Shown one piece after another: positions 1-29,661 of a stretch of 32,959 bases of DNA. The stretch covers positions 67,752,922 through 67,785,880 of the forward strand of contig NC_068982.1 of the NCBI RefSeq assembly GCF_001194135.2, given 5' to 3'. The translations under genes and the position numbers were made by a program. This stretch comes from Octopus bimaculoides (taxonomy: Eukaryota). Position 1 is the first letter of the stretch. Every line of letters starts with the position of its first letter. The notes below the pieces were generated by a model, which did no database searches, had not been told where the DNA came from, and saw only the letters and a program-made list of their open reading frames with translations.

Positions 1-176
1 ATAAACAAATCTCAGGGTCAAACACTGTCTGTAGCTGGTCTTCTCTTGGAAGAGCCCTGCTTCTCACATGGACAACTGTATGTTGGCTGCTCAAGAGTGG
101 GCAGCAAAAAAAAAACCTATTTGTATATGCTCCACAAGGGAAAACAAGGAACATTGTTTACAACGAGGTGTTATAA
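1..176 (+). mobile_element. Helitron Rep/Hel protein, C-terminal Pif1-like helicase remnant (frameshifted)
   Basis: Manual translation: INKSQGQTLSVAGLLLEEPCFSHGQLYVGCSRVGSKK, then a frameshift in the A-run, then NLFVYAPQGKTRNIVYNEVL-stop. This matches the Helitron helicase motifs (TINKSQGQT...CFSHGQLYVAxSRV). Confidence 0.93.
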
Positions 177-295
177 TCACAACAGCAAGAAAGTATGTAC
201 ATGATCACCTTCTTTTACGAAACTTCATTGACTTTCATATATTTATATTGATATACATATATATACGTGTGTTTGGGTGCGTGTGTGTATATACA

Positions 296-386: not shown

Positions 387-397
387 TTATATATAAA

Positions 398-864
398 ATA
401 TGATTGACATGCGAGTTATGCAACATTGATAAACATAAAATAAACTAGACAAATCTGCTGAATTTTTAACAAGATCTCAACTAATAAAATGACACCTTTG
501 TTGCAAAACTTAACTCTCATTTTTACTGCGATTGTGGATTAGTTTTTCACTAAATTACTATCTAATTATGAGCGTCAGCCTTTATGGTCAACATTTGTAA
601 GAAGAGCATTCAATTAAGAAAATGTTGAAAACATGTATTACCTTTGGAGCTTGTTATATAATTATAGCATTAACCCACGTTATTTCTATCACTGCAAACG
701 CGACAAAAATAGATTTCGAACATCCATGTAAATTATGTATCCTTGACATCTTCACTGCTCATAGCAAAAAATAAATAAATAAATGTTGAGAAAAACGAAT
801 AAAATAAAATAAAATAAATGAGAAAAAGATATTTTTCTTCAAGAGGATTATTTTGAAACGGTGT
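398..864. repeat. Unclassified interspersed repeat; 398-520 duplicated at 1630-1752
   Basis: The ~123-bp block ATATGATTGACA...GTTGCAAAACTT.ACTCTCAT aligns by eye with 1630-1752. The right boundary is tentative (TTATTTTGAAACGGTGTA could be a TA-flanked TIR). Confidence 0.5.
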
Positions 865-1041: not shown

Positions 1042-3190
1042 TGCATACGGTAAATAAAAGGCTAAACCAAAGTAAAATCTCTACACAGCTACCTAAACCA
1101 GAAATAAATGGAACAGCACAGCAAGTCACCAACACACATAGACAAGCACATACTGAAACAAAACAACAAGAAGGAAAATAACACACACCATGACAGACCA
1201 ACTATAATCGATGATGGAGACGAACTGATTGAAGAAATAACAGAAATAGAAGAAAACATCATAAAGTCGATAAATATGAGTCAGCGTAAACGTCTCCTTA
1301 GACGACAACAAATAAACAGTTCTGTGCAAGGATAAATAGATACACCAGAACCCTACAAAAAAATAATGACCACATCAAAAGATAACCCAGATATCAACAA
1401 ACTATACAATCTGATCTACTCTGCAGCTGTAGCGATATTCAAAGAAAGCGGACTTCACCTCCACGAAAAAAAAAAAATAAAGAACAGCCAAATCTGAAAC
1501 CATGAAATGGAAACAGTATAAGAAATAATCTTAAAAAAAGAAAAGAAAGACTTATTCCTACTCTATGAATTAGAGACAGAGGTATCAAGCATGAAAAATA
1601 AAATGTCATATATAACAAAATAATACAACATATGATTGACAGGTGCGATATACAACATTGATAAACATTAAACAAACTAGACAAATCCGGTGAATTTTTA
1701 AGAAGGTCTCAACCAATAAAATGGCACCTTTGTTGCAAAACTTTACTCTCATGAGTATGGAGCAGGGAGGTAGAGGAAAAAATTAAACAGGGCATAACAG
1801 CAAAAACCTGACGCATACAGCGTTATGAAAAACACGAGCGCTTCTTTCAAGAACATAGAGAATTTAAGATAAACACGAAAAGATTCCACAGAAAGTTAAA
1901 CAAAAAAACCATAATGACATGCCTACAAAATCAGAGATTCATTCGCACTGGAAATAAATATGGAACAAACAAGAACAACGCAACGCAAATGCTCAATGCC
2001 TAAATAGGGAGAAGGAAAAGAAGAGCAAAATAGCACCAAAGGTATGGCCCGCCATCACAAGCCAAGAGATTACCGACACTCTGAGGACAACCAGTAACTG
2101 GAAAACTTCATGGATAGACAAGGTTCTCAACTTCTGACTGAAACACCTCACCAGTACCCATGCTTACACAGCGGCAGCATTTGATTTAATAAGAAGCAAG
2201 CCAGAATCAACACCAAACTGGATACTGGAAGGACAAACTGCTCTAATTCCCGAAAACAAAGACACCATATATCCACAAAATTATAGGCCAATAACATGCC
2301 TTTCAACAATCTACAAAACCTTCACATTCGTCATCTGTAACCGGCTTGTAATATAAAAATGTTTTTCCAGAACAAAAGGGATGTTTGGCTGTAAATAGCA
2401 GCTTCTGGTAAATCGAGCCATTATAGAGGACTGTAAGAAGAGATAGGCAGACCTAAACTTGATTTGGACTGATTACCAGAAAGTATTCGACAGTGTTCTA
2501 CACTAATGGATACTGGAATCACTCCACACAAATAAAGTAACTCCAACACTACTAAAATATATCAACTATGCAATGGCAAACTAGAAAGTCAGTATGACAC
2601 TGAAAAATGAATCACAAGTCATTAAAACCTGCCATATACCCATAAGAAAGTAGGGGTTCCAAGGAAACTCGCTGTCACTCCCGTTTTTCTGTCTTGCTTT
2701 GATCCCACTAACAAACTTGTTAAATGAAACGACCATAGATTACAGGTGTTATGGACAAACGATTGACCATCTCCTATACATGGATGACTTTAAAAATTTC
2801 ACCAATAATACTACGGAACAGGAAAACCTAAAAGTTGCCCATAGTTTCAGCAAGGACATCGGCAGTATAGAGCTGGAAAAAAATGATCAAAGTGACATTG
2901 AGAAGAAGTAAATTAATCAGCACTGAAAACACTGCAGTCGACATAAAAGAAAATGGCGGAGATCAGTGCAGACTGACTATGAGTGTTGTATATATCACCC
3001 AAACAGCATCAGCCAAGTAAAGACAGCAAATATAAATATATCAAGCAAGTGTCCAAACTATGAAGAAAACGATATTCTACGTGTCGGTAGTGAACATCTC
3101 AAGAACTACTCACTTCCTTAAACCCCAGAATTGCTGAACTAACACGCCTCAACAAAGTCCTGCAAGTGGAACACCCTACATACTACATAA
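1042..3190 (+). mobile_element. R4/Dong-clade non-LTR retrotransposon remnant (N-terminal region plus RT; 5'-truncated, decayed)
   Basis: Translated motifs with stops/indels: EKIKQGITAK-RIQRYE...FKINTKRFHRKL; SNWK; NWILEGQTALIPE...PQNYRPITCLSTIYKTFT; PEQKGC; WTDYQKVFDSV; GFQGNSLS..FCLALIPLTNLLN; HLLYMDDFK (YMDD at 2777-2788); FSKDIG. Ends are approximate. Confidence 0.88.
1630..1752. repeat. Non-LINE insert inside the R4/Dong remnant, copy of 398-520
   Basis: High visual identity to 398-520. LINE-like translation resumes after it (VEEKIKQGITAK). Confidence 0.75.

Positions 3191-6130: not shown

Positions 6131-6133
<3 letters not shown>

Positions 6134-6187
<54 letters not shown>
6134..6187 (+). 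repeat. (CA)n microsatellite running into gap
   Basis: Direct reading. Confidence 0.99.
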
Positions 6188-6940
6188 NNNNNNNNNNNNN
6201 NNNNNNNNNNNNNNNNNNNNNNNNNNNNNNNNNNNNNNNNNNNNNNNNNNNNNNNNNNNNNNNNNNNNNNNNNNNNNNNNNNNNNNNNNNNNNNNNNNNN
6301 NNNNNNNNNNNNNNNNNNNNNNNNNNNNNNNNNNNNNNNNNNNNNNNNNNNNNNNNNNNNNNNNNNNNNNNNNNNNNNNNNNNNNNNNNNNNNNNNNNNN
6401 NNNNNNNNNNNNNNNNNNNNNNNNNNNNNNNNNNNNNNNNNNNNNNNNNNNNNNNNNNNNNNNNNNNNNNNNNNNNNNNNNNNNNNNNNNNNNNNNNNNN
6501 NNNNNNNNNNNNNNNNNNNNNNNNNNNNNNNNNNNNNNNNNNNNNNNNNNNNNNNNNNNNNNNNNNNNNNNNNNNNNNNNNNNNNNNNNNNNNNNNNNNN
6601 NNNNNNNNNNNNNNNNNNNNNNNNNNNNNNNNNNNNNNNNNNNNNNNNNNNNNNNNNNNNNNNNNNNNNNNNNNNNNNNNNNNNNNNNNNNNNNNNNNNN
6701 NNNNNNNNNNNNNNNNNNNNNNNNNNNNNNNNNNNNNNNNNNNNNNNNNNNCTAATGTGTTTTTGCTTTTTGTAACATTTACAACATTTTCTGTGATACA
6801 CGATCCCTTTCGATCGGCGCTTTTTTTTTCACGATCCCTATTGATCGAAATTTTATTTTTCTCCTTTTTCAAAAGTAAAGCTCTACGTTGTATTTTGTCC
6901 CCTCTGTGTTCGGCCCTTTGTGGCTAATAAAGAAACATTA

Positions 6941-9100: not shown

Positions 9101-9424
9101 AACCCTTTTATATGCTACCACCAGAAGTACAGAAAGAAGTGACGGGTCTTGTATCATCACCCTTAAGACCCACCAAACCTTCTCACTTCTCCCAATTTTG
9201 TCATCTCTTTATCCAGCTCTCTAAGCCCCACACTAGCAATATAATCTCCCTGAAATTACCGTCTTGTTCATCTTTACCTTGTAGTTACTTTTAGTTGTGT
9301 AAAAACAAAATCTACCGTACCAGTAGCACTGGTCTCAGAAGTTTTGCAAATGCCACGGTGATAACTCCGTCTTCCAGACCAAACCGTTAAAACCATATAT
9401 TAAATCAATCTTGGATTATACTAG

Positions 9425-10531
9425 GGATCTTTTCTCTTTGAACGGCACATCGAGAAATTAATTTTTTGTAACTAAACACTTTCAAACTTCGGACACTGGC
9501 AGAATGTGTTATATAAAACATCTTTTACTCTTAATGCTGTTGAGAAGAGTTTATATTTTCAAAGTTATTTCGTGTTAAAGTTGTCGTATTTCGGTAATTT
9601 CAACCAATCAATGACGTGTATTCAGCTGAATAAAATTACTGCCGTTGTTTGTCAACAACAACTGTCGACGTTGTATATTTCGTTTGTCACTGTTATTTAT
9701 GACATCGTTCGTGCGCTTGTACTGGTTTTAGCTTTAGGGTTTTAGAGTTAGGGTTAGGGTTAGGGTTAGGGTTTTAGGGTCAGGGTTAGGGTTTTAGGGT
9801 TAGGGATAGGGTTTTAGAGTTAGGGTTAGGGTTAGGGCTTTAGGGTTAGGTTGGGGTTAGGGTTAGGGTTTTAAAGTTAGGGTTAGATTTAGGGTTTTAG
9901 GCTTAGGGTTTTAGGATTAGGATGAGGGTTTTAGAGTTAGGGTTAGGGTTTTAGGGTTAGGGTTTTAGGGTTAGGGTTTAGGGTTAGGGTTTGGGGTTTT
10001 AGGGTTAGGGTTAAGGTTTTAGGGTTACGGTTAGGGTTGGGATTTTAGGGTTAGAGTTACGAAAAAATGTGAAAAAATGAAGAAATTGAAGAGGGAGGGG
10101 CAAAAATGTCTTTCCGAAAATAGTAGCTGAAAAACAGGAAGAAAAAAAAACTAAAAGCAGTAGAAATGCGCGAACGATTGTAGTGGTGCCATGAAGTAAA
10201 CATGCTCCACATACACTCGTTTATTCATACAAACGTAACTCAAATGAAATATGTCATAAATAGCAGTGACAAACGAAATATACACCGCTGGAAGTTGTTG
10301 TTGTCAAACAACAGCAGTAATTTTATTCAGCTGAATACACGTCATTGATTGGTTGAAATTACCGAAATACGACAACTTTAACACGAAATAGCTTTGAAAA
10401 TACAAACTTTTCTCAACAGCACTAAGAGTAAAAGATGTTTTATTTGATACATTCTACCAGTGTCCAAAGTCTGAAAGTGTTTAGTTACAAAAAATTAATT
10501 TCTTGATGTGCCGTTCAAAGGGAAAAGATCC
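9425..10531. mobile_element. Non-autonomous TIR/foldback DNA transposon (Merlin-like) enclosing a telomeric repeat array
   Basis: Termini GGATCTTTTC...GAAAAGATCC. Perfect 8-bp TSD TATACTAG at 9417-9424 and 10532-10539. The TIRs 9425-9705 and 10251-10531 (281 bp each) are reverse complements with scattered mismatches. GG termini plus 8-bp TSD plus long TIRs fit the Merlin superfamily; that assignment is inference. Confidence 0.9.
9733..10060 (+). repeat. Interstitial telomeric array (TTAGGG)n with TTTTAGGG and point variants
   Basis: Direct reading; lies inside the TIR element. Confidence 0.97.
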
Positions 10532-10689
10532 TATACTAGCTCTCCCCGTGCTCCCAATTTCTCCATGACATATTCAATAAACTTTTAAGAACAAAGAAAG
10601 AAAAACCCAAAAGCACTATACATATATAACATATGCATGATCCATCTCTACACAACAATGCAAACAACTAAATGTGAAAGAGCCCTTGG

Positions 10690-11127
10690 ATTTGTGAAGA
10701 CAGAATTGGTTGCTGAAGATATTTCATTACTGAAAGCCCCTGTCACTGCTTGATAGTCTAGCTATCTCAAGAACCTGAGTTGGGATTCACACTACTGAGT
10801 TGTTCCGACGAACAGTGACTGTTGTGCTCTGAAGGAAACCGTCTTGCCTGAGCCGCCGTAATTACTATCAGAATGTACAACCGTAGAAATTGGAACGAAA
10901 TTTGGTGAGAAGAAAATGTATCCAGACTGTAATACTGTACTCCATACGATTAATCATTGTTTACTGGAGTGTGCAGTATAGAATTCAGCTAGGTAAAAAC
11001 ATAGTGTCACTGGAAGAACAGATTTGAGGGAGGCGCATTGTCATTCAGACGACTACTTATTTAACAATAGGTTTGCTTAATCAGAATCGACTTGGGGTTA
11101 CACAAAAACAGCAACAACAACAATAAG
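10690..11127 (+). mobile_element. 3' end of an I/Jockey-group LINE ORF2 (CCHC knuckle) with a short CAA tail
   Basis: Translation from 10919: (C/Y)PDCNTVLHTINHCLLECAV-stop-NSAR, matching the CxxC...TxxHxLxxC motif. Followed by CAGCAACAACAACAATAA. Boundaries are approximate. Confidence 0.55.
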
Positions 11128-27569: not shown

Positions 27570-29661
27570 CAGTCTGTTACAGGGAAGTGGCTATAAGAGC
27601 AACCGTGGCTGATGAATATTGACCATTTAATCTACTTTAGCTATTGCTCAGTTATCCTGATAACCTTACGGAAAATTTCAAGCATCAAGCTCTTCAGGTA
27701 TATGTATTCCAGCATTGAAATTGAGCATACAGAAGAAATCCGCAATGAATCCCTCATTGGCAAACTCACAGACATATAAATGAGCAAGGATTTTAAAATA
27801 CAACTTCCCTCAACCTAACTACAGTGAAGTCAATAATCTAGTAAAAGAAATTTTAGAAGAGACATCATAATGTTGTCACATTGATAATATATGTCAATAA
27901 CAATGAAGTCAAACTTATTGGAAATTAGAAGGCAGTCTATTTTGCTATTTGTAGAGATTTTACAACAGAAAGCTGCTCATAGTGGAATTGGAAAGACATT
28001 CCCGATCGATCGGTCTATTGTTTGCCAACGTACATCAACATTAACGGCATAACTATTGTAGTTGTATCATTCTACACTCATGCTTCACGTGGACATGGAC
28101 ACAAAAGACACATCCGTTTGCATTATTGTCACAAATACAGGAACTGGACAAGTTCTTAGAAAATGCAAACTACTTGTCTGGGATGAATACGAAGTGGCAC
28201 ACAAGAGAGTTTGGCGGCCCTTGACAGGATATTGCAGAGCTTACGCATATCTTACTATAGCTCCCCAAAGAAACTAAAGCTTGATGAAAATCATGTTCGT
28301 CTTAAATCATTATCGCTTTGGACCAAAGTTATAATCTTCAAATTGTCTACAATTATGAGTCAATCTTTTTCGAGATGAGCTATCTGATTATTTTTTGAGA
28401 TCAGCTCTCAGGTCATTCTGCCGAAAAATTTGTCTCAAGCTGGAGAAAGACGATCTCCTCGCATCAGTTATGGCATCATGTTCAGTGATTAACACAGCAG
28501 ATGAATTAATATCGAACTTGATCTCCAGCCAACAACATCGTTAACACGAAGGGGCAGCTCAAAAACAAACTGTTTCGATGAGCAGCATGAAACTTCCAAG
28601 AAATGTTGATATTTCAGGAAGAAATAGTTGATTATCCTGCAGAATTTAAGAAATTCATTAGAACCTTCAGGTCTCCTTCCTTAGAGGTTACATGCTTTTC
28701 AAAAAGAATTCTCTTCTATGTTACTGCAAAATTTAAATCAGCAGCAGTTGTCCAATAGTACAAGGAAAATGGTTAAGAAGATTATACCATATTTGATGGA
28801 AACAAAAAATTCACTGAGTAGACTAAAAAAGAAAACATAATTATATTTAAAATTTCATACATACCAAAACGTGTGCCTTTTTGAGCTAAATAGACTTCAG
28901 TTTTCAAGTCATCTACGTTTCGTCAAATCAATGAAGGAATACCAAGGACAAGCATCGACAATTGCTGGACTGCATCTTGATCAATTCTGTCGAGCCCATG
29001 ATCAATTTTATGTAATATTTTCAAGAGATAGAAGCCCCCATAATCTCCCTGTTTATGCTTCTGTTGGTAAAAAAAAAATACCATATTCAGAATTCTCCAA
29101 ACAATGATGGGTACAGATCTAATATTCTACACTCAGAGACATATCACAAATTTTAGTATAATTTATTCATTATTTCATGCATTGCTCTTTTAGTATTTGC
29201 AGGTGAGGGTTTCTTCTTTTGCACTACGGTTTCCACGCATTATAAGTATAATTTTGTTTCCAACAGTAGTTTACTTTTCAGCATTCCAGCTTTTATTCAT
29301 TTTTCAAATAATTTAAAAATTTAAAGAATACTAAGAATAAAAGATTATCTCCTTTTATCTTCAATAATAGTTTCAAACGAAATAAAATTGTTTTCTTAAT
29401 TTAAAACTGTGCTCTTAATTTTCTTGCATTCAATAAAATTCATTTACACAATTAAATTACGAAGCATACTATTTATATTACTGAGTGTGTATCTGTAGTA
29501 TAGTGCATAAGAGAGCACAGTCGTATTGGTAAACCATTTTATTGCCTACGTAAAAGATAAATTTTCCAAGAAATTAAAAAGTGTTCTATTTAACCAAAAA
29601 TGCTTTCATTAAGAATATTTTTGCTGCCTTTCAATCTAGGCGGTCCTGGGTATTCTGTTAG
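27570..29661 (+). mobile_element. Decayed Helitron: helicase half plus 3' terminus
   Basis: Walker A-like SGIGKTF (27984-28001); VCII...QVLRKCKLLVWDE; ALDRILQSLR; NSLEPSGL; MLLQNLNQQQLSNSTR (MLLRNL...LCNGTR); KEYQGQ..IAGLHLDQFCRAHDQFYVIFSR. The 3' end CTAGGCGGTCCTGGGTATTCTGTTAG|T (to 29661) parallels GCCGGGTATTTCTGCTAG|T at 386. Confidence 0.9.

What the first reader, a model, noticed from the sequence alone, without database searches (positions are those of the whole stretch)
9417..10539. Foldback DNA transposon carrying a telomeric (TTAGGG)n array: a mobile source of interstitial telomeres
Seen: perfect 8-bp TSD TATACTAG, GGATC...GATCC termini, 281-bp TIRs, and ~330 bp of TTAGGG/TTTTAGGG repeats inside; no ORF. 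A further TIR match (9703-9729 vs 10151-10178) shows the left arm lacks ~70 bp present on the right. Known: 8-bp TSD with GG termini and long TIRs characterises Merlin (IS1016-related) elements, and TTAGGG is the telomere repeat of most animals including molluscs. Inference: this array arrived by transposition, not by chromosome fusion or telomerase healing. The family could scatter G-quadruplex-forming, shelterin-binding sites through the genome. I do not know of a description of such a family.
Basis: partly seen in the sequence, partly recalled or inferred. Interest (0 to 1): 0.82.

Follow-up and report, generated by a model that had tools for sequence, protein, structure and literature searches.

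The report
Transposon carrying telomere-like repeat array
A 1.1-kb non-coding "jumping gene" with long inverted ends carries a stretch of telomere-type repeats in its middle, and a second, diverged copy 7 kb away does the same, so some internal telomere repeats in this genome probably arrived by transposition rather than by chromosome fusion.

Summary
At 9425-10531 lies a 1107-bp element with a perfect 8-bp target-site duplication (TATACTAG), GGATC/GATCC termini and 281-nt inverted arms (93% identical). Between the arms is a 324-336-bp array of TTAGGG/TTTTAGGG units. There is no credible ORF.

The main new result is a second, diverged member (about 80% identity) that starts at 16511 with the same GGATC terminus. 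It also runs arm, spacer, (CCCTAA)n, in the same polarity as the first copy read from its right end, before an assembly gap. Both telomere-type arrays in the window, and all six G-quadruplex motifs, sit inside this family.

Best reading: a non-autonomous, foldback-like class II transposon that carries a telomere-motif minisatellite as cargo. Its TSD length, 5'-GG ends and arm length fit Merlin, but the transposase test could not be run.

No copies outside the window could be retrieved, because the available collections hold no host genome. Copy number, the autonomous partner and empty sites therefore remain untested. I could not show that the two arrays share one arm/array junction, so repeated in-place acquisition is not excluded.

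Transposons carrying satellites are well known. A telomeric cargo is an unusual variant, proposed in reviews, but I found no description of one.

The parts
9417..9424 (.). Left copy of the 8-bp target-site duplication, TATACTAG
   Evidence: Read directly. Identical to 10532-10539.
9425..9705 (+). Left terminal inverted repeat of element E1 (core arm, starts GGATC)
   Evidence: 281 nt, 92.9% to the reverse complement of 10251-10531. TATTTCG occurs 3 times.
9706..9735 (+). Inner end of the left arm. It pairs with 10147-10178. The left arm lacks about 72 nt that the right arm has.
   Evidence: blastn 9704-9735 vs 10178-10147, 81%. Alignment.
9736..10059 (+). Telomere-type minisatellite, G-rich strand on +. 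TTAGGG and TTTTAGGG units in 14- and 20-nt higher-order periods.
   Evidence: TRF. Unit parse and 5 G4 motifs. Edit distances 7.4% and 15.7%.
10060..10146 (+). Unique A-rich spacer between the array and the right arm
   Evidence: No match to the left arm or elsewhere in the window.
10147..10250 (-). Inner part of the right arm: a 32-nt match to the left arm plus about 72 nt absent from the left
10251..10531 (-). Right terminal inverted repeat of E1 (ends GATCC)
10532..10539 (.). Right copy of the target-site duplication, TATACTAG
16511..16722 (+). Arm of a second, diverged family member (E2). It starts GGATCT.
   Evidence: 79-83% to the E1 arms by blastn and the repeat finder. nhmmer E=8.5e-61 with the 3-arm profile, which includes this arm, so that score is not independent. 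Different flanks, so an independent insertion.
16723..16800 (+). E2 spacer between arm and array
   Evidence: No significant similarity to the E1 spacer.
16801..16858 (.). E2 telomere array: (TAACCC)5.5 then (GGTTAG)4.2, both perfect, running into a 420-N gap (16859-17278)
   Evidence: TRF 100% matches. Sequence. Zero edits from the canonical unit.

Best explanation
E1 (9425-10531) is an old, immobile copy of a non-autonomous class II (cut-and-paste) transposon with very long inverted arms, that is, a foldback-like element. A DDE transposase supplied in trans would recognise the GGATC... termini, excise the element, and insert it at a target cut with an 8-bp stagger. Repair of that stagger produced the TATACTAG duplication. 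The TSD length, the ends and the arm length point to a Merlin-type enzyme.

The telomere-motif minisatellite between the arms is passenger DNA that travels with the element. Each insertion therefore creates an interstitial telomere-like site. A second subfamily copy (E2, from 16511) has the same layout: terminus, arm, spacer, then C-rich strand running inward. This makes the array a property of the family.

Shown: the anatomy, the TSD, the second copy, the shared polarity, and the hairpin potential.
Inferred: the transposition mechanism, the Merlin affiliation, that the array pre-dates the E1 insertion, and that the two arrays descend from one ancestral array.
For: - Precise 8-bp TSD and sharply bounded 281-nt arms. 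The array lies wholly inside them.
- No coding capacity.
- A single strand folds into a stem of about 290 bp with the array in the loop, -293 kcal/mol.
- Arm differences are mostly transitions (16 of 20) and K2P is 0.076, as expected for neutral decay after insertion.
- The E1 array needs 51 edits from pure TTAGGG, or 24 edits (7.4%) from a two-unit grammar. The TTTTAGGG variant has itself been amplified in 14- and 20-nt periods. That is more history than the roughly 3.8% per-arm decay since insertion allows, which suggests the array was already a variant minisatellite when E1 landed.
- E2 shares the GGATCT terminus and a core of about 200 nt, has unrelated flanks, and carries a telomere array 290 nt in from its end, in the polarity of E1's right half.
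- Both telomere arrays in the 33-kb window, and all six G4 motifs, lie in these two elements.
- Merlin's structural criteria are 5'-GG ends, 8-9-bp TSD and TIRs of 24-462 bp (PMC8101967). All three are met.
Against: - Only two copies, both from one window.
- No outside copy, autonomous partner or empty site could be retrieved.
- The spacers next to the arrays in E1 and E2 are not detectably homologous, and the arrays sit at different distances from the termini. Common descent of the arrays is therefore not demonstrated.
- E2's right arm is missing, either in the gap or absent, so it is not shown that E2's array is internal to a complete element.
- The E2 array is perfectly pure while E1's is degenerate. 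This fits recent or renewed array growth at least as well as simple inheritance.
- An 8-bp TSD with GG ends is not exclusive to Merlin.
- The host was not identified, so 'telomeric' assumes a TTAGGG-telomere host.
Confidence: 0.68

Rival explanations
1. The transposon is real, but the arrays were gained in place, independently in each copy. In this view the centre of a long inverted repeat is prone to hairpin or cruciform breakage, and telomerase-assisted double-strand-break repair inserts TTAGGG repeats there. Alternatively, a TTTTAG/TTTAGGG seed at the inner end of the arm expanded by slippage. The array would then mark fragile foldback centres and would not be cargo.
For: - ITS insertion during double-strand-break repair is documented in mammals (abstracts of PMC7215372 and PMC8537989).
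- Both E1 arms end in ...CTG(G/C)TTTTAG, and on the left the array starts right after it. That is a plausible telomerase primer or microsatellite seed.
- The left arm has lost about 72 nt plus a spacer equivalent, as resection at a break would cause.
- The spacers of E1 and E2 are not homologous.
- The E2 array is pure, so it looks young.
Against: - The E2 polarity (arm, spacer, then CCCTAA followed by TTAGGG) is the opposite of what telomerase extension of either or both break ends gives, which is TTAGGG then CCCTAA (inference from the 3'-end addition mechanism).
- The E1 array is at least as diverged as the arms are from each other, and it contains an amplified variant unit. It does not look younger than the insertion.
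- Two of two family members carrying an array in the same polarity is more simply explained by inheritance.
Confidence: 0.2
2. The architecture is as described, but the element belongs to a different superfamily. It would be mobilised by a Mutator-like transposase (the group that includes the Drosophila Foldback elements), or by a P/Galileo-like, hAT or still unclassified enzyme, not by a Merlin one.
For: - Very long TIRs and foldback structure are typical of MULE/FB and Galileo-type elements (my own knowledge; Tetris foldback, PMC4079207).
- 8-bp TSDs also occur in hAT and P elements.
- No Merlin transposase was seen in the window.
Against: - The termini are GGATC, not the hAT YARNG motif and not the P/Galileo CA-type ends. 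This is read from the sequence; the family motifs come from my own knowledge.
- MULE and FB elements usually make 9-11-bp TSDs (my own knowledge).
- All three published Merlin structural criteria are met.
Confidence: 0.3
3. It is not a transposon at all. It would be a relic of a telomere-telomere fusion or of an internalised, healed chromosome end flanked by inverted subtelomeric sequence, or else an assembly chimera.
For: - Interstitial TTAGGG arrays are conventionally read this way, for example in a slug genome (PMC12506671).
- The window is a gapped draft with 6 N runs.
- E2 ends at a gap.
Against: - E1 is contiguous with no N.
- It has a perfect 8-bp duplication exactly outside the arms.
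- Its array runs in one direction only.
- E2's junction is CCCTAA then TTAGGG, the reverse of a fusion.
- A related arm occurs at an unrelated site.
Confidence: 0.02

Closest known systems
Merlin superfamily non-autonomous elements (IS1016/IS1595-related DDE transposons)
   Same: 5'-GG termini, 8-bp TSD, and TIR length inside the reported 24-462 bp range (PMC8101967). No coding capacity, as in deletion derivatives.
   Different: No transposase or autonomous partner is linked to it. I found no reported Merlin element with an internal telomere-motif array. The arms make up more than half of the element.
Foldback-type transposons with internal tandem repeats (Drosophila FB, Tetris, Galileo)
   Same: Long inverted arms that can snap back into a hairpin, and tandem repeats inside the element that can seed satellites (Tetris, PMC4079207).
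   Different: The arms here are unique sequence and are not built of subrepeats. The TSD is 8 bp with GG ends. The repeat is the telomere motif. In E1 it lies between the arms; in E2 it may extend the arms.
Tandem-repeat-containing MITEs and Helentron non-autonomous elements of bivalve molluscs (DTC84 of Donax; Cg170-type carriers in Crassostrea)
   Same: Short non-coding mobile elements of molluscs that carry and disperse short satellite-like arrays (PMC3879986, PMC7492417, PMC8268682).
   Different: The oyster carriers are rolling-circle Helentrons. From my own knowledge, those make no TSD. Their arrays have monomers of about 150-170 bp, not telomere hexamers. Telomeric arrays are not mentioned in the two oyster satellitome papers I checked.
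Ciliate telomere-bearing transposons (Oxytricha TBE1, Tetrahymena Tel-1)
   Same: DNA transposons physically associated with the host's telomere repeat (PMC4724952; references in PMC13085455).
   Different: In those elements the repeats are at the outer termini, and the elements are tied to programmed genome rearrangement. Here the array is internal cargo in an animal genome.
Interstitial telomeric sequences inserted at double-strand breaks by telomerase, or left by fusions
   Same: The end product is a short, degenerate TTAGGG array far from a chromosome end.
   Different: Those arrays have no flanking TIRs or TSD. Reviews mention TE-mediated transfer of telomeric repeats only as a proposal (PMC6410037; PMC9693754).

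Membership tests
Merlin superfamily | 8- or 9-bp target-site duplication | tested here: met
   TATACTAG x2, exactly 8 bp. Criterion from PMC8101967.
Merlin superfamily | TIRs beginning 5'-GG | tested here: met
   GGATC at both ends of E1 and at the end of E2.
Merlin superfamily | TIR length 24-462 bp | tested here: met
   281-286 nt core. About 311 and 385 nt when the inner match is included.
Merlin superfamily | Mobilised by a DDE_Tnp_IS1595 transposase encoded by an autonomous partner with matching termini | not testable with these tools
   There is no such ORF in the window and no other arm copy. The host genome is not in any searchable collection.
hAT superfamily | 8-bp TSD together with short TIRs starting YARNG | tested here: not met
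   The TSD length fits, but the termini are GGATC and the arms are 281 nt. The family motif is from my own knowledge.
Mutator-like / Drosophila Foldback group | Long TIRs with 9-11-bp TSD | tested here: inconclusive
   Long TIRs are present, but the TSD is 8 bp. The TSD range is from my own knowledge and 8 bp is not strictly excluded.
Foldback element (structural class) | Inverted arms make up most of the element and fold into a long hairpin | tested here: met
   Arms account for 562-696 of 1107 bp. Stem of about 290 bp, -293 kcal/mol.
Foldback element (structural class) | Arms built of tandem subrepeats, as in Drosophila FB | tested here: not met
   The arms are unique sequence. Only a 7-mer, TATTTCG, recurs 3 times.
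Helitron/Helentron non-autonomous satellite carriers | No TSD, no long TIRs, 5'-TC...CTRR-3'-type ends | tested here: not met
   8-bp TSD, 281-nt TIRs, GGATC ends. Family features are from my own knowledge.
Penelope-like retroelement derivatives with telomeric tails | Hammerhead ribozyme in the repeat, or an RT/GIY-YIG ORF | tested here: not met
   No Rfam hit at gathering score in the window, and none relevant at E<=1 in 9300-10700. No ORF.
Telomere-telomere fusion relic | Head-to-head (TTAGGG)n(CCCTAA)n flanked by subtelomeric DNA, without a TSD | tested here: not met
   The E1 array runs in one direction and has a TSD. The E2 junction has the reverse order.

The most novel reading that the evidence does not exclude
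The telomere tract is not inert cargo. In this reading, a foldback transposon family keeps an outward-pointing telomere repeat in each half (G-strand running 5'->3' towards each terminus, as in E2). This would let the family recruit telomere-binding proteins or telomerase, or supply ready-made telomere seeds when a chromosome breaks inside or beside an element. The family would then be a driver of chromosome fission and neo-telomere formation, and the main source of interstitial telomeric sites in this lineage.
Probability: 0.06. Interest if true: 0.85.

Novelty: new variant of a known kind. Interest (0 to 1): 0.5.

Why it matters
Interstitial telomeric repeats are routinely read as scars of chromosome fusions or repaired breaks, and they are used to reconstruct karyotype history. 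If a transposon family spreads telomere-type arrays, that inference becomes unsafe in this lineage.

Such a family would also place G-quadruplex-prone, hairpin-prone and possibly telomere-protein-binding sites at many loci. In this window, one of the two copies coincides with an assembly gap.

The idea is easy to test once the host genome can be searched. Count the copies, then ask what fraction of all interstitial telomeric arrays lie between these arms.

Tried and rejected
Retrieving more copies:
- I translated the 79-aa ORF in the arm and searched the 5.8-billion-protein collection. Nothing was found.
- Exact look-up of 10 window ORFs, aimed at reaching allelic or empty-site contigs, found none on record.
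- DNA pattern scans used the arm core conserved between E1 and E2. Metagenome contigs (two different patterns), prokaryotic genome contigs and viral contigs all gave 0 hits. These collections do not hold the host, so the zeros say nothing about copy number.

Host identification:
- A LINE-like ORF fragment gave no protein homologue.
- ARAGORN found no tRNA.
- The host therefore remains unverified.

Paralogous empty site:
- The flanks are unique in the window.

Homology of the arm/array junction between E1 and E2:
- Local alignment scored no better than shuffles; 274 of 500 shuffles reached the score.

Retroelement or ribozyme origin:
- No Rfam support.

Pfam on the arm ORF and on neighbouring fragments:
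- Only a weak PIF1 hit, elsewhere in the window.

Tool artefact:
- The '100% inverted repeats' reported by the repeat finder at 6133-6612 vs 15794-16273 are N runs plus AC/TG microsatellites.

Literature (10 searches, 14 papers):
- Reviews propose TE-borne ITS.
- Mollusc TEs carry satellites.
- I found no described TIR family with an internal telomeric array.
- No paper held all three phrases 'interstitial telomeric', 'target site duplication' and 'inverted repeats'.
- This covers open-access text only. Repbase and Dfam could not be consulted.

Full report
**1. What is there**

Reading 9300-10700 directly shows TATACTAG at 9417-9424 and again at 10532-10539. The first copy is followed by GGATC and the second is preceded by GATCC. 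The bases just outside the two octamers differ, so the duplication is exactly 8 bp.

The repeat finder reports a single inverted pair in the region, 9425-9710 against 10246-10531, 286 nt at 92%. blastn gives 281 nt at 92.9%, E=1.5e-119. The terminal 27-mer occurs only at the two ends of the element, with none expected in shuffles.

After position 281 the right arm carries about 72 extra bases. Both arms then share ATCGTTCG.GC..T.TACTG.TTTTAG (9704-9735 vs 10178-10147, 81%).

Between the arms lie two parts:
- an array at 9724/9736-10059 (TRF periods 6, 14 and 20);
- an 87-bp A-rich unique spacer at 10060-10146.

The longest ORF is 79 aa, lies inside the arm, and has no homologue or domain.

**2. 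Nature of the array**

The array is telomere-type but is not a clean telomerase product.
- It holds 19 clean TTAGGG and 6 clean TTTTAGGG units, plus recurrent variants such as TTTTAGAG (4 times).
- 55% of its bases lie in perfect TTAGGG.
- The longest pure run is 4 units.
- Its minimum edit distance to pure (TTAGGG)n is 51 of 324 (15.7%).
- Its distance to any concatenation of TTAGGG and TTTTAGGG is 24 of 324 (7.4%). Shuffled controls need about 122 edits.

The 8-nt variant has itself been amplified in 14- and 20-nt periods, so the array has a history of unequal exchange.

The array contains five non-overlapping G4 motifs. The only other G4 motif in the 33-kb window lies in the second array described below.

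**3. Age**

The arms differ at 20 of 281 sites (16 transitions, 4 transversions, 4 of them in CpG context), giving K2P 0.076. If the arms were identical at insertion, each has drifted about 3.8%. With that much decay an intact TSD is unremarkable.

The array's residual divergence (7.4% even under the generous two-unit model), together with the amplified variant, suggests it was already a variant minisatellite when E1 inserted. This is an inference, because tandem arrays can mutate faster than unique DNA.

**4. A second family member in the same window**

The repeat finder over the whole window (families D13 and D14), blastn and an nhmmer profile of the arms all detect a related arm at 16511-16722.
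- It begins GGATCT and is 79-83% identical to the E1 arms over the alignable core.
- The conserved stretch TATTTCG.TAATTTCAACCAATCA.TGAC is present.
- Its upstream flank is unrelated to E1's, so it is an independent insertion of a diverged subfamily and not a segmental duplicate.
- 78 bp further in comes (TAACCC)5.5, then (GGTTAG)4.2, both perfect, and then a 420-N gap. No right arm follows the gap.

Read inward from its terminus, E2 runs arm, spacer, C-rich strand. E1 has the same order and polarity when read inward from its right end.

Apart from these two arrays, TTAGGG and CCCTAA occur only as singletons in the window. Both telomere-type arrays therefore lie inside this family, which occupies about 4% of the non-N sequence.

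**5. What the polarity excludes**

A telomere-telomere fusion reads (TTAGGG)n(CCCTAA)n on a given strand. So does telomerase extension of both ends of a break. E2 reads the reverse, and E1's array runs in one direction only and is enclosed by a TSD. Neither a fusion relic nor a healed break fits.

E2's flip fits a palindromic element: arm-spacer-(CCCTAA)n | (TTAGGG)n-spacer-arm. The centre of such an element could not be assembled. The 348 bp seen so far would need about 348 bp more, and the gap is estimated at 420.

E1 could derive from such a form by loss of the left spacer and the C-strand half. Its left junction, TTTTAG|CTTTAGGG, offers microhomology for that deletion. Equally, E2 could be a palindromised derivative of an E1-like form. 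I cannot tell which came first, and an assembly artefact at the gap edge is not excluded.

**6. Limits**

The spacers next to the arrays in E1 and E2 are not detectably homologous, and the arrays lie at different distances from the termini. I therefore cannot prove that the arrays descend from one ancestral array.

The main rival is repeated in-place gain at the fragile centre of a long inverted repeat. It could happen through telomerase-assisted break repair, as documented for mammalian ITS (abstracts). It could also happen through expansion of the TTTTAG seed that ends both arms. E2's polarity and the age of E1's array argue against this rival. I give it about 0.2.

**7. Mechanism and classification**

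A non-coding element with long TIRs and a TSD is mobilised in trans by a DDE transposase that makes 8-bp staggered target cuts. This follows from established knowledge of class II elements.

The structural definition of Merlin is conserved 5'-GG ends, an 8-9-bp TSD and TIRs of 24-462 bp (PMC8101967). All three are met. The defining transposase could not be sought:
- the window has no other arm copy and no transposase-like ORF;
- none of the searchable collections holds the host genome.

From my own knowledge of the family motifs, hAT (YARNG ends), P/Galileo (CA-type ends) and Helitron/Helentron (no TSD) do not fit. Mutator-like and FB elements usually give 9-11-bp TSDs but are not strictly excluded.

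As single-stranded DNA the element folds into a stem of about 290 bp with the array in the loop (-293 kcal/mol). 'Foldback-like' is therefore a fair structural label, although the arms are unique sequence and not subrepeats.

TATTTCG recurs three times at identical positions in both arms and partly in E2. It may be a subterminal binding motif. This is untested.

**8. Comparison with the literature**

- Mobile elements that carry satellite-like arrays are well documented, especially in molluscs: DTC84 MITE (PMC3879986) and Helentron carriers (PMC7492417, PMC8268682). They are also known among foldback elements (Tetris, PMC4079207).
- Telomere repeats at transposon termini are known in ciliates: TBE1 (PMC4724952) and Tel-1, which is discussed in PMC13085455.
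- In a slug genome, ITS are still read as rearrangement history (PMC12506671).
- Ten full-text searches found no described TIR family with an internal telomeric array. No paper combined 'interstitial telomeric', 'target site duplication' and 'inverted repeats'.
- This search covers open-access text only. Repbase and Dfam could not be checked.
- TTAGGG is the only experimentally determined cephalopod telomere motif (Adachi 2014, cited in PMC13218726). However, I could not verify the host, which looks like a repeat-rich, 34%-GC, gapped invertebrate draft.

**9. Verdict**

This is a real feature, correctly described. The main interpretation, that the telomere-type array arrived inside a transposon, is supported. 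The second copy strengthens the case that the array is a property of the family.

Still open:
- Merlin membership, which is plausible but unproven;
- family size;
- common descent of the arrays;
- any effect on telomere proteins.

It is a new variant of a known kind (satellite-carrying, foldback-like, non-autonomous DNA transposons). Interest is moderate. It would rise sharply if a genome-wide count showed that most interstitial telomeric sites in this lineage are carried by this family.

Noticed in passing
window 16801-16858 with gap 16859-17278: A perfect (TAACCC)5.5 array switches directly to (GGTTAG)4.2 at the edge of a 420-N gap. The CCCTAA-then-TTAGGG order is the reverse of a telomere fusion. 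It suggests an unassemblable palindromic centre of the second element, or a gap-edge artefact.
   Followed up: partly
window 28062-28274 (+) and 1-201 (+): PIF1-like helicase fragment (Pfam PF05970, E=2e-5, 24.8 bits, just under the 25.9 cut-off). The window start reads ...KSQGQTL...HGQLYV..SRV, which looks like a Helitron/Pif1 helicase C-terminus by eye but has no Pfam hit. These are probably Helitron remnants.
   Followed up: partly
window 19388-19620 and 20998-21296: Two roughly 90% identical copies of a composite repeat with an internal (ATT)n microsatellite of very different length (about 12 vs 34 units). Each ends in a GGAATCGAAC box that resembles the reverse complement of a tRNA T-arm. 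ARAGORN finds no tRNA. Probably a SINE-like family.
   Followed up: partly
window 2138-2908 (+), 13675-14184 (-), 21326-21535 (-): Stop-free stretches with retroelement-like motifs seen by eye: NYRPI and YMDD of a reverse transcriptase, a LINE ORF-like stretch, and a GIY-YIG-like C-terminus. None reached Pfam significance and one gave no protein homologue.
   Followed up: partly
window 6133-6751 and 15794-16280: The '100% complementary 480-nt inverted repeats' reported by the repeat finder are N runs next to (AC)n and (TG)n microsatellites. Several assembly gaps abut microsatellites. This is an artefact, not biology.
   Followed up: yes
window 391-520 and 1623-1752: A 130-nt direct repeat at 88% identity, 1232 bp apart. 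It could be the ends of another element. Not examined.
   Followed up: no
window 9566-9682 and 10274-10390: The heptamer TATTTCG occurs three times at identical positions in each E1 arm, and once plus a degenerate copy in E2. It may be a subterminal transposase-binding motif.
   Followed up: partly
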